In this document: positions 2,924 through 62,003 of the stretch, piece after piece
Numbering within the stretch: position 1 is the first letter of the stretch
Layout of the letters: every line of letters starts with the position of its first letter
Source of the DNA: Hemiscyllium ocellatum
Lineage: Eukaryota
Assembly (NCBI RefSeq): GCF_020745735.1
Contig: NC_083436.1
Location: 30,837,299-30,901,298, forward strand
Reading direction: 5' to 3'
DNA length: 64,000 nt
Notes under the pieces: generated by a model
Database searches by the model: none
The model's input: only the letters and a program-made list of their open reading frames with translations
What the model was told of the DNA's origin: nothing
Translations under genes and position numbers: made by a program

Positions 2924-3158
2924 GTAGTCACATGAAAGAAGTGAAACTATCACTGTATTCTAACAGATGAAAGGCTTAACAGACAATCAATTTTTCAATG
3001 TATAATTTCAGTTACATCACACTGCAAGTTTTTGCTATAAATTCTGTGCTACGATCGAGCCCTCCACTATCACCTGATGAAGGAGCGTCGCTCCGAAAGC
3101 TAGTGTGCTTCCAATTAAACCTGTTGGACTATAACCTGGTGTTGTGTGATTTTTAACT
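2924..3158 (+). mobile_element. Penelope-like 3' fragment, family B, with hammerhead ribozyme
   Basis: TSD ATGGAT(T/A)GGGTA at 2912-2923 and 3159-3170. Homologous to 53012-53430 and 61785-62003. Confidence 0.85.
3071..3105 (+). ncRNA. Minimal type I hammerhead ribozyme motif (family B, intact)
   Basis: CAC-CTGATGA-A-GGAGC-gtc-GCTCC-GAAA-GC-TA-GTG: stem I CAC/GTG, 5-bp stem II, palindromic AGCT, predicted cleavage after CUA at 3102. Confidence 0.8.
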
Positions 3159-3375: not shown

Positions 3376-3577
3376 GTAAAAAATGAGGTCTGCAGATGCT
3401 GGAGATCACAGCTGAAAATGTGTTGCTGGTCAAAGTACAGCAGGCCAGGCAGCATCTCAGGAATAGAGAATTCGACGTTTCGAGTCTGATGAAGGGCTTA
3501 GGCTCGAAACGTCGAATTCTCTATTCCTGAGATGCTGCCTGGCCTGCTGTGCTTTGACCAGCAACACATTTTCAGCT
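3376..3577. mobile_element. Penelope-derived fold-back element, family A
   Basis: 15-bp TSD GGGATATGGGCCTGA at 3361-3375 and 3578-3592. 76-bp inverted arms at 3409-3484 and 3503-3578. HHR core CTGATGA...GAAACGTC at 3486-3513. Confidence 0.9.
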
Positions 3578-3812
3578 GGGATATGGGCCTGACGCTGGCA
3601 AGTGGGACTAGGTTAGTTTAAGGTATCTGGTCGGCATGGACGGGTTGGACCGAAGGGCCTGTTTCCGTGCTGTACTTCTCTATGACTGTATGAATGCTTT
3701 GGGGTCCTTTACATCCCACATGAAAGGGCAGCTGGAGTTTCAGTTTGAATGCCCCATCCAAAACACACTACCTGGGAAAGTGCAGCACATCACTCACTCA
3801 CACACTGGAACG

Positions 3813-40638: not shown

Positions 40639-40999
40639 TACTGAGTTTTGAGAAGATTTGTAGCTCAGGTTGAAGTTTTGGATGTAGGTTTGCTCGCTGA
40701 GCAGAAAGGTTCATTTCCAGAAGTTTCGTTACTTTACTAGGTAACATCTTCAATGGACCTCATGTGAAGTCAAACAAACACATCGAGTTAGACCCCCATC
40801 TACCACCCCCTGAGAAAAGGAACGGGAAGTGACTTCACCACAGGAAATAACATCACCACAGGAAATGACATCACCAACCCAAAGAAACCCAAACATATAA
40901 ATAGAAAGCAGCAATTTTCAGCAATACTTTGCATGAGGTCCACTGAAGATGCGACCTAGTAAGGTAACAAAATGTCTGGAAATGAACTTTTCAGCTCAG
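40639..40999. mobile_element. Penelope insertion, family C-related: inverted terminal repeats around the ORF C-terminus and 3' UTR
   Basis: 12-bp TSD TGGACTACTTCT at 40627-40638 and 41000-41011. Internal DNA codes NKHIELDP-IYHPLRK (frameshifted), resembling the end of a Penelope GIY-YIG region. Decayed HHRs on both strands, with stem I TCCA/TGGA. Confidence 0.8.
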
Positions 41000-41480
41000 T
41001 GGACTACTTCTGTTTGGTAGTTCTTGAAGTCACGAATTATTGAGGTACTGAAAACTGCCTGGTACTTGTGGAATCACATTTGGGAGAGCATAGAAGACAG
41101 TTGTCTTCAAGATTAAAGAACTTATTTCAGTGCAAGCTCTGCGGAGTCTTGGTGTGATTCAAAGACCTTTTTAAGCAAACCCATTCCCGGTCACATAATC
41201 AAAGCATTAGTCTGCACTAATGAATTCCACCATATTTTATTCACCAAGTAAGTTTCTGTTTAGCCTGGATTATTACAAAAGCAATTAACAATCTTTAAAA
41301 ACAAAGAATTAGGCATTAATTTACAAAATAGTTTTAATGCTATCCAGTGAGGGGTTGGGAGGTTTCAACTGAATCTTTTACACATGTTTAAAAGCTGATT
41401 GAAGATTTGTAGCTCGGGTATCCGTTGTTGTGGTTCTGCTCGCCGAGCTGAAAGTTTTTGCTGCACACGAGGCTCCAACA

Positions 41481-41520
41481 GCACTGATGATGTTCCCTAG
41501 CCAGGGAACGAAACGTTTGC
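41481..41520 (+). ncRNA. Minimal hammerhead ribozyme motif, tandem copy 1
   Basis: GCA-CTGATGA-T-GTTCCCT-agcc-AGGGAAC-GAAA-CG-TT-TGC: stem I GCA/TGC, 7-bp stem II, ACGT palindrome, cleavage after 41517. Confidence 0.85.
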
Positions 41521-41696
41521 AGCAAAAACTTCCAGCTCGGCGAGCAGAACCACAACAACGGATACCCGAGCTACAAATCTTCAATCAGATTTTAAACACT
41601 TACGGGCGCGAAACGCTGAAACAAGCCAGGAGATGGGAATCCTGCGCTAACCGCCTCAGCGCAACATATGACAGCGCTTCACACGAGGCTGCAACA

Positions 41697-41736
41697 GCAC
41701 TGATGATGTTCCCTAGCCAGGGAACGAAACGTTTGC
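41697..41736 (+). ncRNA. Minimal hammerhead ribozyme motif, tandem copy 2
   Basis: Identical to copy 1; cleavage after 41733. Confidence 0.85.
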
Positions 41737-43908
41737 AGCAAAAACTTCCAGCTCGGCGAGCAGAACCACAACTTTTACACATGTTTTTACATTTTATTTC
41801 AATTGATTCATCAATAATAGATTTATTAACATTTTACATTATTATAACCTTTTAGTAGGCATTTTATTGTGAAATATCCATGTGCTACAAATTCTATACA
41901 TGGAAACTATATGTGAGATTATATATGCATTCTGTAACATTCTCTCTGTTACTTGTTTACTTTGGAGTGCATTTTCCTCAAAATGTGGTGTTTTTCTCAC
42001 ACACACCCTGGAACTGGGATGTCTTCAGCTAAATGAACACTGCTGTGCCAACAATTACCATAGGTAGGTAGGTTTCAGTTTTACCAGGTAATAGGGGATA
42101 TCGTTTAGGAAAGTTCCCATCAAACTGTGCTTATTTTTCATTCAATGCAGCAGAGATCAGAAATACCTGTTTTATCATGTAGTTAGCTGTCACTGTTTTT
42201 GACATAATGTGAGCTTGGATATTCAAATAGTTTCAGAGCCAGCAGTTAACAGCTGTCTCGAGCAGCAGTTATATCTCTCCTGGAGGACTGGGAACAGCTG
42301 TTCTCTAATAGATGCTGTTTCAGGGAGGCCACTGGGATACAGCACAGTTAAACTAGGTGGATCTTGATCTGCAGTAACTAATCAGAGGAAATTTAACATG
42401 TAATGACATTGTTGGTAATATGTTAGAGTCGTGTTTGGCTTCACCAAATGCAGTGATACTTGGTTAAAGGGAAGCTTGTTTAACACCTTGAAATTATTTG
42501 ACAGCTTCCTGTCATCTTTCCATTAGAAAAGGACAACACTGCTTAAGATATCGAAGGCAAGTTGAGATTTAAATTGTCCATGAGCATTTATTGCAATGAT
42601 TAAACAAGACCGACAAAGGTTTTAGAAATGCATTCATCATTTGGACAACTGTAAATATTAATTGAAAATTAAACAATTATCTATGTCTCTCTCAAAGCAA
42701 GAGATTAATCTGAAAAATATGATAGTTACTTTATTGACGTTATCCTGTGGTATCCTGTGACCTCGTTGCAAGATGTTTATGAACTGTTTTGACTTTGTCT
42801 AATTTCAACTTGAAAAGAAGTTTCAGATGAAAACCTTTACCACAAGCTAGAATACAAAGTCCCCATTCATTCATTCTGTTATTGCAGTGTCTGAGTACAG
42901 AAGCAAATATTTGGCAGAGGAATGCAGGGCCAACAATGGTGTAAGTGATGGGATATTCCTTTTCATAGAAGCGTATGCTAAGGTTACATTTCCTCTTCAC
43001 AATTTATTTTTATAACCATCGAAAAAAGCTTTTGTGAGACAAATGTGCTCCTAAATAGACTCCCCAATAGCTTGAAAGCATTTTGAAGCGATTATGGCTA
43101 TAGAGCCATCAACATTTCAGAATAAAAGGACTTCCAGTTCGTGTCAATATATTTGCCCTCAAATGTCAAGAAATGCAGTTACCTTGATCAGAGTCGCCTC
43201 TTTTCACCCTCTGCAATATGTTTAGATGCAAGAAATAGTAAAGCTTTGCACCAACACTTCATTCATAAATGTCTAGTTGTCACCCTGATTTCATATAAAA
43301 TATGCTAGTTGAAAAGTTGCCAGTGCTTCAAGAAGAAATGTTAATAGTGGACTTTACCCAGGTTGTACCACCTTCAAACTATTTGCCTAATCTTAAATGC
43401 ACATGTCATATTAATTGGACATTGAGGTATGTCGGGTTATTTATCATTAGCTTGTGAATGTGTGTTGCCATGTTTAACTGAAAAAAAAAGTTCCAGTTCA
43501 GATTTGGAAAATATTCTGTTCTGGTATATGCACAACCTAAGTACTCGATTATGACTAAAAACAGTGTGTGTGCCAAGAAGAAAAAAATGGCTAGCTTGAA
43601 ACATTTGGAGGATTTCCTTTTGCTTAAAAAAGTGTATAGTAAAATGGTAAAGCTGCTATGGAGAATGAGAATATGAATTTGTTATAATTTTTTAAAAAAT
43701 CATTCACAGGAAAGGACATCAACAGGCTAGGGTAGCATTTATTGCCCAGTGGGCAGTTAAAAGTCAAACACATTGCTGTAGTCACATGTATGCCAAACCA
43801 GGTCAAGTTTCCTTCTCTCAAGGGCATTAGTGATCCAGATGGATTTTCCAACAATGGTTATCATTAGACTCTTAATTATATTGAATTCAAATTCCACCAT
43901 CTACTGTA

Positions 43909-61784: not shown

Positions 61785-62003
61785 ATACAAAGTTAAAAAT
61801 CACACAACACCAGGTTATAGTCCAACAGGTTTAATTGGACGCACACTAGCTTTCAGAGCGATGCTCCTTCATCAGGTGATTGTCTGATGAAGGAGCATTG
61901 CTCCGAAAGCTAGTGTGCTTCCAATTAAACCTGTTGGACTATAACCTGGTGTTATGTGATTTTTAACTTTGTACACCCCAGTCCAACACCGGCATCTCCA
62001 AAT
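61785..62003. mobile_element. Penelope-derived fold-back element, family B, HHR cores on both strands
   Basis: 11-bp TSD CTTCACCAGTT at 61774-61784 and 62004-62014. Arms of about 90 bp. Minus-strand HHR at 61844-61878; plus-strand HHR at 61884-61915. Confidence 0.9.

What the first reader, a model, noticed from the sequence alone, without database searches (positions are those of the whole stretch)
41390..41771. Retrozyme-like unit: two identical intact hammerheads in tandem, 216 nt apart
Seen: the HHRs at 41481-41520 and 41697-41736 are identical and in the same orientation, inside direct repeats bounded by a perfect 15-bp TSD. The spacer joins a Penelope-like ORF start directly to the 3' terminal repeat, so RT and endonuclease are absent. 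Known: tandem minimal HHRs can pair through their ACGU palindromes into a double hammerhead, and retrozymes release monomers that circularise. Inference: a + strand transcript would cut after 41517 and 41733 and release a 216-nt non-coding RNA, possibly circular and mobilised in trans. CpGs are intact in a CpG-poor neighbourhood, suggesting a recent insertion.
Basis: partly seen in the sequence, partly recalled or inferred. Interest (0 to 1): 0.88.

Follow-up and report, generated by a model that had tools for sequence, protein, structure and literature searches.

The report
RT-less mini-Penelope insertion, two hammerheads
A 382-bp insertion in what looks like a shark genome is a young, gene-less offshoot of Penelope-like retrotransposons that carries two copies of their stripped-down hammerhead ribozyme 216 nt apart; it is a clean example of a kind already described and very common in this genome, and nothing yet shows that it releases an RNA circle.

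Summary
A 97-nt direct repeat occurs twice, 216 nt apart (2 mismatches). The 40-nt hammerhead (HHR) stretches are identical, and a perfect 15-bp target-site duplication bounds the insertion (41390-41771). CpG o/e is 0.98 inside and 0.20-0.24 in the flanks.

It is the reverse complement of 41518-41593 and ends at the complement of the first base after the predicted cut. [quoted passage not shown] Helix II covaries. The motif fits the published PLE "min-HHR".

Not shown: transcription, cleavage, circularisation, or other copies with the same junction. Published min-HHRs cleave poorly, and the inverted arm disfavours HHR-1 in read-through RNA.

Earlier notes of this scan report many similar mini-Penelope elements elsewhere in this genome. 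Verdict: a new member of a known kind, of modest interest.

The parts
41375..41389 (.). Left copy of the 15-bp target-site duplication. Its last 5 bases (41385-41389) also match the element as microhomology.
41390..41465 (-). Inverted partial copy, the reverse complement of 41518-41593 with 2 mismatches. It ends at the complement of the first base after the predicted cleavage site. Its outer ~38 nt (41390-41427) reach beyond the 3' end of the direct copy and so form the PLE 'tail'.
   Evidence: tail concept from PMC8557442
41460..41465 (.). Junction microhomology between the inverted arm and the direct copy (5 of 6 bases shared with 41676-41681). It explains the 41463 G/T 'mismatch' of the direct repeat.
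41466..41517 (+). Partial first unit (unit positions 165-216), holding most of HHR-1.
41479..41522 (+). HHR-1, a minimal type-I hammerhead. It has a CUGAUGA core, an unpaired U, a 7-bp helix II with a 4-nt loop, GAAA, a 1-bp helix III with a CG loop, a cut after U41517, and a 3-bp helix I.
   Evidence: 53.7 bits, E about 4e-15
41518..41733 (+). Complete 216-nt unit from cleavage site to cleavage site.
41518..41666 (+). Stretch homologous to the 5'/N-terminal leader of PLE proteins P0002, P0003 and P0004. All three tblastn matches end at 41666.
41534..41572 (+). Conserved hairpin, AGCUCGG (41534-41540) paired with CCGAGCU (41566-41572). The 3' end of the insertion (equivalent to 41555) falls in its loop.
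   Evidence: one compensatory pair only; weak
41667..41699 (+). 33-nt linker upstream of HHR-2 of unclear origin. It contains the deletion junction, which cannot be placed exactly. It shows weak similarity to the next ORF stretch of L001.
41695..41738 (+). HHR-2, identical to HHR-1. The predicted cut is after U41733.
41734..41771 (+). Partial third unit (unit positions 1-38) and 3' end of the insertion. It shares 1 nt of microhomology with the target.
41772..41786 (.). Right copy of the 15-bp target-site duplication.

Best explanation
This is the product of one retrotransposition event of a Penelope-like element (PLE) lineage, and the RNA that was copied had lost the RT/GIY-YIG gene. The insertion has four parts: an inverted partial copy, about 1.4 head-to-tail copies of a 216-nt unit, a ~38-nt tail, and a 15-bp target-site duplication. 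Each unit consists of the first ~150 nt that follow the PLE hammerhead (the leader of the PLE ORF), fused through a ~33-nt linker to the hammerhead itself. The likely sequence of events is as follows (inferred). A PLE RT/endonuclease supplied in trans nicked both target strands 15 bp apart. The bottom-strand nick primed cDNA synthesis on an RNA longer than one unit, either a tandem transcript or a 216-nt circle. The top-strand nick, primed through 5 nt of microhomology, copied a second RNA up to a 5' end made by hammerhead cleavage. The two cDNAs were then joined through 5-of-6-nt microhomology. The hammerheads are of the PLE min-HHR type, which can only act as a pair through the ACGU palindrome. 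Whether this particular locus is transcribed and cut is unproven. For HHR-1 in read-through RNA it is unlikely. My confidence that this is a PLE-derived, RT-less insertion is about 0.95. My confidence that its template was already a short 216-nt-unit non-autonomous element, rather than a one-off deletion, is about 0.55-0.6.
For: Architecture: direct repeat, inverted repeat and duplication match the PLE insertion structure described in PMC8557442, namely a partial tandem, an inverted 5'-truncated copy and a 30-40-bp tail. Homology: phmmer of the 141-aa frame finds P0002, P0003 and P0004. P0004 carries DUF8422, a domain that co-occurs with RVT_1 and GIY-YIG in eukaryotic proteins. DNA and protein alignments show homology from the HHR to 41666. 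Ribozyme: a covariance model built only from relatives outside the window hits both HHRs at 53.7 bits with all pairs standard. Four of 7 helix II pairs and 1 helix I pair show compensatory changes, and 86% of cells are paired against 32-47% when the partner is slid. The features match the published min-HHR: long helix II, short helix I, unpaired nucleotide 5' of stem II (PMC4209133). The inverted arm ends at 41465, which pairs with 41518, exactly the predicted cut. Youth: CpG o/e is 0.98 against 0.2 in the flanks, there are only 3 differences in 167 duplicated nt, and none is a CpG transition. Context: the literature derives animal non-LTR retrozymes from PLE pLTRs, including in a cartilaginous fish. 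Scan notes report many mini-Penelope elements in this genome; these are leads only.
Against: No second copy of the 216-nt unit or of its junction exists in the 64-kb window. Metagenome and viral scans were empty, though shark DNA is not expected there. A propagating family is therefore not shown. No RT/EN partner was found among the long ORFs of the window. Only one of the several hairpin-type insertions in the window has its arm ending at the cleavage site, so that coincidence could be chance, roughly 2-5%. No RNA data are available.
Confidence: 0.58

Rival explanations
1. One-off product. A full-length PLE RNA (promoter-HHR-ORF...HHR) was copied, and the RT jumped from just upstream of the 3' hammerhead to codon ~50 of the ORF leader, skipping about 3 kb. 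Alternatively, a full-length insertion later lost its interior by genomic deletion. In either case the 216-nt unit never existed as an RNA and is not a family.
For: The junction region occurs once in the locus and nowhere else in the window. Weak similarity between 41676-41714 and the next ORF stretch of L001 could have guided a template switch or a deletion. PLE insertions are known for complex rearrangements. Every feature of the locus fits one internal jump equally well.
Against: The scan's notes list many short hammerhead-bounded Penelope units of various lengths in this genome (unchecked). Non-autonomous PLE derivatives are documented. The retained parts are exactly those conserved across relatives: the HHR plus the downstream hairpin.
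Confidence: 0.3
2. This locus is an active retrozyme: a + strand transcript is cut after 41517 and 41733 by the paired hammerheads, and the 216-nt product is ligated into a circle that serves as template for further insertions.
For: Both cores are intact and identical, and the ACGU palindrome is present. In a transcript that starts at 41466, the HHR helices cost 0.8 kcal/mol or less over the MFE. The circular 216-nt fold is somewhat more stable than shuffles, z = -2.2. There are precedents in axolotl and invertebrates (PMC7229834).
Against: In a read-through RNA the 85-bp hairpin (whole-insertion MFE -204.9) competes for the helix I strand of HHR-1, and forcing HHR-1 costs 9.1 kcal/mol. Helix I has only 3 contiguous pairs, and the active ACGU duplex is worth only -1.7 kcal/mol, against -7.7 for the inactive 8-bp palindrome pairing. 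The upstream CCAAT/TATA stretches seen in L001 and L003 are missing. Min-HHRs cleave weakly even as dimers, and 8 of 9 predicted Xenopus dimers did not cleave. There is no expression evidence.
Confidence: 0.1
3. The locus is not a ribozyme element. Either it is a chance CUGAUGA/GAAA pair inside an ordinary repeat, or it is a hairpin (miRNA-like) locus.
For: Rfam gives no hammerhead at gathering score, and sub-threshold miRNA-family hits cover the hairpin.
Against: The miRNA hits are far below gathering score (59.8 against 150, 34 against 80) and reflect only the long inverted repeat. An independent covariance model gives E about 4e-15, and compensatory changes support helices I and II. Rfam models are not expected to match 1-bp helix III variants.
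Confidence: 0.02

Closest known systems
Minimal hammerheads (min-HHR) of metazoan Penelope-like elements (Cervera & de la Pena 2014, PMC4209133)
   Same: [quoted passage not shown] The motif sits in the repeated ends of a PLE-type insertion. Pairs on opposite strands 100-700 bp apart were also described.
   Different: Here the two motifs are only 216 nt apart with no RT/EN between them, instead of about 3 kb. The helix I adjacent to the core has only 3 contiguous pairs.
Animal non-LTR retrozymes (Cervera & de la Pena 2020, PMC7229834; Li, Clavereau & Pollet 2026 preprint, 10.64898/2026.07.22.740005)
   Same: Non-coding tandem units of 170-400 nt (51-972 bp in the preprint), each with a type-I HHR. 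When target-site duplications are present they are longer than 4 bp. The elements derive from PLE terminal regions and are reported in a cartilaginous fish. The locus meets the preprint's operational definition: an HHR in every repeat.
   Different: The 2020 paper assigns canonical HHRs with loop-loop contacts to retrozymes and min-HHRs to PLEs; this unit has the PLE min-HHR. GC is 51% against a typical value below 45-50%. There are only 1.4 units. No circular RNA has been shown.
Canonical PLE insertion architecture (Craig et al. 2021, PMC8557442)
   Same: A partial tandem forming pseudo-LTRs, an inverted 5'-truncated copy at the 5' end, a 30-40-bp tail at one end, and an HHR in the pLTR.
   Different: The whole coding body is missing. 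The 'full-length' unit is 216 nt.
Plant LTR retrozymes (Cervera et al. 2016, PMC4918200)
   Same: A non-autonomous retroelement with two hammerheads predicted to excise an RNA between them.
   Different: Plant elements have type-III HHRs in true LTRs, a PBS and PPT, 4-bp duplications, 600-1000-nt circles and Gypsy-type mobilisation. None of these features is present here.
Twin priming of LINE-1 (recalled from memory, Ostertag & Kazazian 2001; not checked here)
   Same: Both nicked target strands prime cDNA synthesis, giving an inverted 5' segment joined to a direct 3' segment through microhomology.
   Different: The enzyme is different (GIY-YIG EN and a telomerase-like RT). Here the inverted segment ends at a ribozyme cut site, and the direct segment is longer than one unit.

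Membership tests
Hammerhead ribozyme, PLE min-HHR class | Conserved core: CUGANGA, GAAA, the A15.1-U16.1 pair and H17 | tested here: met
   Both copies have CUGAUGA, GAAA, the pair A41513-U41516 and U17.
Hammerhead ribozyme, PLE min-HHR class | Helices I and II supported by structure and covariation among relatives | tested here: met
   Four of 7 helix II pairs and 1 of 4 helix I pairs show compensatory changes. 86% of cells are paired against 32-47% when slid. A model built without window sequences scores 53.7 bits. Caveat: only 9 sequences from about 5 lineages.
Hammerhead ribozyme, PLE min-HHR class | Long helix II, short helix I, an unpaired nucleotide 5' of stem II, and a minimal palindromic helix III | tested here: met
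   Helix II has 7 bp, helix I has 3 bp then an A.A mismatch then 1 bp, there is an unpaired U41491, and helix III has 1 bp inside the AAACGUUU palindrome.
Hammerhead ribozyme, PLE min-HHR class | Match to an Rfam hammerhead model at gathering score | tested here: not met
   There is no hit at gathering score; Hammerhead_3 scores 13.9 bits against 48.5. I would not expect Rfam's models to match a 1-bp helix III, so this argues little against membership.
Hammerhead ribozyme, PLE min-HHR class | Self-cleavage activity | not testable with these tools
   This needs in vitro transcription. The kissing-type dimer is a pseudoknot and cannot be evaluated with nested folding.
Penelope-like element (insertion hallmarks) | Partial head-to-tail tandem (pseudo-LTR) with an adjacent inverted 5'-truncated copy and a 30-40-bp tail | tested here: met
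   compared with the description in PMC8557442.
Penelope-like element (insertion hallmarks) | Sequence homology to PLE elements | tested here: met
   P0002, P0003 and P0004 show 46-51% identity over 60-72 aa. P0004 carries DUF8422, a domain linked with RVT_1 and GIY-YIG.
Penelope-like element (autonomous) | ORF encoding RT and a GIY-YIG endonuclease | tested here: not met
   The unit is 216 nt. Homology stops at 41666, before DUF8422 and the RT. Pfam finds nothing in the 141-aa frame. The element is therefore non-autonomous.
Animal non-LTR retrozyme | Tandem units of a few hundred nt, each with a type-I HHR and no coding capacity for RT | tested here: met
   1.4 units of 216 nt and two HHRs.
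Animal non-LTR retrozyme | Canonical type-I HHR with helix I / helix II loop contacts (2020 definition) | tested here: not met
   This is a min-HHR with 3-bp helix I and no loop 1. The 2026 preprint's operational definition does not require this feature.
Animal non-LTR retrozyme | Multi-copy family with independent insertions | tested here: inconclusive
   There is no second copy in the window, and the metagenome and viral scans were empty. The rest of the genome is not searchable with these tools.
Animal non-LTR retrozyme | Expression as linear and circular monomer RNA | not testable with these tools
   No RNA data are available.
Plant LTR retrozyme | Type-III HHRs in LTRs, a PBS and PPT, and 4-bp duplications | tested here: not met
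   The HHR is type I, the duplication is 15 bp, and there are no LTRs.

The most novel reading that the evidence does not exclude
The 216-nt unit would be a self-contained circular-RNA replicon of a vertebrate genome. Its length is a multiple of three, and one sense frame has no stop and begins at the AUG AUG that lies inside the hammerhead core. It could then be translated endlessly as a circle, like the ribozyme-bounded circles proposed for totiviruses (PMC13725137). In that reading, the inverted arm ending exactly at the cut site would be a genomic footprint showing that these min-HHRs cleave in vivo. The evidence does not exclude this but does not favour it: 23% of dinucleotide shuffles also have a stop-free frame, and most of the frame is inherited from the PLE leader.
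Probability: 0.04. Interest if true: 0.8.

Novelty: new member of a known kind. Interest (0 to 1): 0.28.

Why it matters
If the family reading is right, this copy is an unusually legible intermediate between autonomous Penelope elements and the short hammerhead-bearing 'retrozyme' repeats of animals. It still carries the PLE-type minimal ribozyme, the PLE leader sequence and every PLE insertion scar, yet it is already reduced to a 216-nt unit. The inverted arm stopping at the predicted cut site is indirect genomic evidence that such minimal hammerheads do cleave in cells, which in vitro work has struggled to show. It also fits models in which both target nicks prime cDNA synthesis. Beyond that it is one ordinary copy among very many in this genome.

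Tried and rejected
1. Rfam at gathering score and at E up to 10 gave no usable hammerhead hit. The sub-threshold MIR9471, mir-8186 and mir-44 hits merely reflect the long inverted repeat.

2. Exact and degenerate HHR patterns found nothing in metagenome contigs (both scans used) or viral contigs. This is uninformative for a vertebrate repeat.

3. The search of earlier findings by sequence was blank.

4. Pfam on nine long window ORFs and on the 141-aa frame found nothing, so no RT/EN partner was found in the window.

5. L002 was searched for a full-length PLE to define the true 3' end. The copy there is truncated after about 340 aa, so the exact deletion junction (41667-41699) could not be placed.

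6. The endless ORF in the circular unit is real but not significant: 23% of shuffles have one.

7. The fold stability of the circular unit is only z = -2.2.

8. The energy of the active double hammerhead cannot be computed with nested folding because it is a kissing-loop pseudoknot. Only the palindrome duplex energies were obtained.

9. The conserved AGCUCGG/CCGAGCU hairpin has one compensatory pair, and that pair could be CpG decay on both arms. It was not pursued.
Full report
**What is in the sequence**

The stretch 41390-41771 is a 382-bp insertion flanked by a perfect 15-bp direct duplication (41375-41389 and 41772-41786). The bases just outside the two copies differ, so the duplication is exactly 15 bp. 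Inside it, a 97-nt segment occurs twice in the same orientation, 216 nt apart, with two mismatches (41463/41679 and 41475/41691). Each copy holds the same hammerhead-like motif.

CpG observed/expected is 0.98 in the element, 0.20 and 0.24 in the 5-kb flanks, and 0.39 in the window as a whole. The CpG remark is also confirmed.

There is an inverted repeat, 85 nt long and 96% complementary, between 41385-41469 and 41514-41598. Base-by-base comparison shows three things.

- The arm proper is 41390-41465, the reverse complement of 41518-41593.
- Its outermost 5 bases overlap the target duplication as microhomology.
- Its inner end, 41465, pairs with 41518, the first base after the predicted cleavage site.

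The next base is a mismatch. After that the sequence follows the direct repeat.

The six bases 41460-41465 match the equivalent bases of the second direct copy at 5 of 6 positions. The 41463 'mismatch' of the direct repeat is therefore really the junction between the inverted and direct parts.

The outer ~38 nt of the arm (41390-41427) correspond to sequence lying beyond the 3' end of the direct copy (41771 is equivalent to 41555).

The insertion is thus made of an inverted partial copy, then unit positions 165-216, then a full unit 1-216, then unit positions 1-38.

**Comparison with the literature on architecture**

Craig et al. 2021 (PMC8557442) describe PLE insertions by three features.

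- They are organised in partial tandems that form pseudo-LTRs.
- They often have an inverted 5'-truncated copy adjacent at the 5' end.
- A 30-40-bp tail is present at one end.

HHRs lie in the pLTRs of canonical PLEs. Every one of these features is present here.

**Is the hammerhead real?**

Rfam gives no hammerhead at gathering score. The only trace is Hammerhead_3 at 13.9 bits, E = 7. The sub-threshold miRNA-family hits just reflect the long hairpin.

The motif reads as follows:

- a CUGAUGA core;
- one unpaired U;
- a 7-bp helix II with a 4-nt loop;
- GAAA;
- a single A-U pair closing a CG loop as helix III;
- U17, with the cut after 41517 / 41733;
- a helix I of three contiguous pairs next to the core.

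This is the 'min-HHR' that Cervera & de la Pena 2014 defined for metazoan PLEs. [quoted passage not shown]

*Independent support from relatives outside the window.* A phmmer search with the 141-aa frame that runs through the element (41430-41852) found three proteins. Their loci carry homologous hammerheads.

- L002 comes from NCBI assembly GCA_000715545.1, which from memory is a liver fluke. I did not check this.
- L001 and L003 are metagenome contigs.

On a 9-sequence alignment, 4 of 7 helix II pairs and one helix I pair show compensatory changes. 86% of cells are paired, against 32-47% when the 3' partners are slid. A covariance model built only from the five non-window sequences hits 41479-41522 and 41695-41738 at 53.7 bits (E about 4e-15; the calibration is rough) with all 12 pairs standard. 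It also picks up two decayed relatives at 40715-40758 (-) and 40938-40981 (+). Both hammerheads are therefore genuine members of a PLE hammerhead lineage.

**Is the spacer a PLE ORF start joined to the terminal repeat?**

The three proteins align with the window frame from the hammerhead onward. The stretch that encodes the ribozyme is read as 'ALMMxP..KRLQ' in all of them.

P0004 continues into DUF8422. That domain co-occurs with RVT_1 and GIY-YIG in eukaryotic proteins, which is the PLE architecture. P0004 also shows the ADKG motif. Craig et al. list a DKG motif among the diagnostic regions.

tblastn of all three proteins against the window ends at the same base, 41666. DNA alignments agree.

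The unit therefore breaks down as follows:

| Window coordinates | Content |
|---|---|
| 41518-41666 | PLE leader |
| 41667-41699 | 33-nt linker of unclear origin |
| 41700-41733 | hammerhead core |

The RT and the endonuclease are absent. The exact junction cannot be placed, because no full-length relative from the same genome was available. The L002 copy is truncated.

**How it was most likely made (inferred)**

- Two nicks 15 bp apart gave the duplication.
- The bottom-strand 3' end, with 1 nt of microhomology, primed cDNA synthesis from unit position 38 backwards. Synthesis ran through a complete unit and on to position 165. The template therefore held more than one unit, so it was either an uncleaved tandem transcript or a circular monomer.
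- The top-strand 3' end, with 5 nt of microhomology, primed a second cDNA from unit position ~76-81 to position 1. Synthesis stopped there, as expected if that RNA began at a hammerhead-cleaved 5' end.
- The two cDNAs were joined at a 5-of-6 microhomology.

This mirrors the more-than-unit or circular template idea of Cervera & de la Pena 2014 and the review PMC6765202.

The coincidence of arm end and cut site has a chance probability of a few percent. The other hairpin-type insertions I looked at in the window do not show it. I therefore treat it as suggestive only.

**Would this locus release a 216-nt RNA?**

- *Folding.* The whole-insertion transcript folds into the 85-bp hairpin (MFE -204.9 kcal/mol). 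Forcing helices I and II of HHR-1 costs 9.1 kcal/mol, and of HHR-2 2.0 kcal/mol. In a transcript that starts at 41466 the cost is at most 0.8 kcal/mol.
- *Dimer contact.* The active dimer contact is a 4-bp ACGU duplex worth -1.7 kcal/mol. The full 8-nt palindrome AAACGUUU, which would disrupt the core, is worth -7.7 kcal/mol.
- *Promoter.* Relatives L001 and L003 have CCAAT- and TATA-like stretches 44-62 nt upstream of the core. The window unit has only the leader-derived sequence and the linker there.
- *Published activity.* Min-HHRs showed no cleavage as monomers and low cleavage as dimers. Only 1 of 9 predicted Xenopus retrozyme dimers cleaved in vitro.

I put the chance that this locus itself yields a circular 216-nt RNA at about 0.1.

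**Family or one-off?**

The junction region occurs once in the locus and nowhere else in the 64-kb window. The public collections I could scan do not hold this genome. The locus alone cannot separate two scenarios: a copy of a 216-nt-unit family, or one internal jump or deletion from a full-length PLE.

Notes from earlier stages of this scan list many hammerhead-bounded mini-Penelope units of other lengths elsewhere in this genome. Two follow-ups called them known-kind elements. These are unchecked leads. They raise the prior for a family but are not evidence for this unit.

**Age**

There are only 3 differences in 167 duplicated nucleotides. Two are transversions and none is a CpG transition, while all CpGs are intact. 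The insertion is therefore young, or the differences date from the insertion event itself (RT errors or two template molecules).

**Comparison with what is known**

This kind of element is published.

- PLE min-HHRs: PMC4209133.
- Animal non-LTR retrozymes of 170-400 nt, with duplications longer than 4 bp: PMC7229834.
- A 2026 preprint deriving those retrozymes from PLE pLTRs across vertebrates, including a cartilaginous fish.

This copy differs from the 2020 retrozyme definition in carrying the PLE-type minimal ribozyme rather than a canonical one. It differs from a PLE in lacking the gene. It sits neatly between the two, as the preprint's model predicts.

**Verdict**

The feature is real and well defined. 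It is a new member of a known kind and of modest interest. The endless-ORF idea rests on three facts: 216 = 72 codons, one stop-free sense frame, and AUG AUG inside the core. It is not statistically supported, because 23% of shuffles also have a stop-free frame. It is recorded as the low-probability novel reading, by analogy with PMC13725137.

Noticed in passing
window 40697-40770 and 40926-40999: An older, decayed relative of the same hammerhead lineage lies about 400 bp upstream. It is an inverted pair of 74-nt arms (85% complementary), each with a degenerate HHR (24.6 and 19.8 bits with model R1), flanking three copies of an 18-mer (40822-40875). This fits the reported tendency of PLEs to land near earlier copies.
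   Followed up: partly
window 3405-3582: A hairpin-type insertion of another min-HHR family: 83-nt arms, 96% complementary, 12 nt apart, with CUGAUGA-A-GGGC...GAAACGUC in the loop region. Here the arm runs past the cleavage site into helix II, unlike at 41465.
   Followed up: partly
window 61786-61973: A head-to-head pair of a third min-HHR family (GAAAGCUAGUG type, AGCU palindrome): 90-nt arms, 96% complementary, 8 nt apart, with complete cores on both strands at 61851-61875 (-) and 61884-61908 (+). More copies lie at 3074 and 53345.
   Followed up: partly
window-wide (13 sites): Thirteen hammerhead-like motifs lie in 64 kb. Twelve of the 13 have one unpaired A or U between CUGANGA and helix II, the feature described for PLE min-HHRs.
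   Followed up: partly
L001 351-384, L003 401-434, L002 5998-6031; window 41484-41492: In this lineage the hammerhead core plus the bulged U spells AUG AUG (A6-U7-G8, then A9-U-G10.1), in frame with the predicted PLE leader. Gene callers start P0003 there. If the true start codon lies in the core, cleavage would separate cap and start codon from the ORF. I found no statement of this in the papers read.
   Followed up: no
window 41518-41733: The unit is 72 codons long and one sense frame is stop-free when read as a circle. This is not significant (23% of shuffles). From unchecked scan notes, several other unit lengths reported for this genome are also multiples of three (354, 366, 384, 1359).
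   Followed up: partly
window 41534-41572; L001, L002, L003 equivalents: A conserved hairpin, AGCUCGG...CCGAGCU, lies just downstream of the cut site in all relatives. The 3' end of the insertion falls in its loop. It may be a recognition element for the RT. There is only one compensatory pair, possibly due to CpG decay.
   Followed up: partly
L002 13848-13931 (-) joined to 13915 onward (+); L003 182-265 (-) and 381-464 (+): The relatives from other organisms show the same head-to-head inverted-copy architecture around the hammerhead. The leader is 46-51% identical at protein level between a vertebrate window and what I recall to be a fluke genome. This points to deep conservation or horizontal spread of this PLE lineage.
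   Followed up: no
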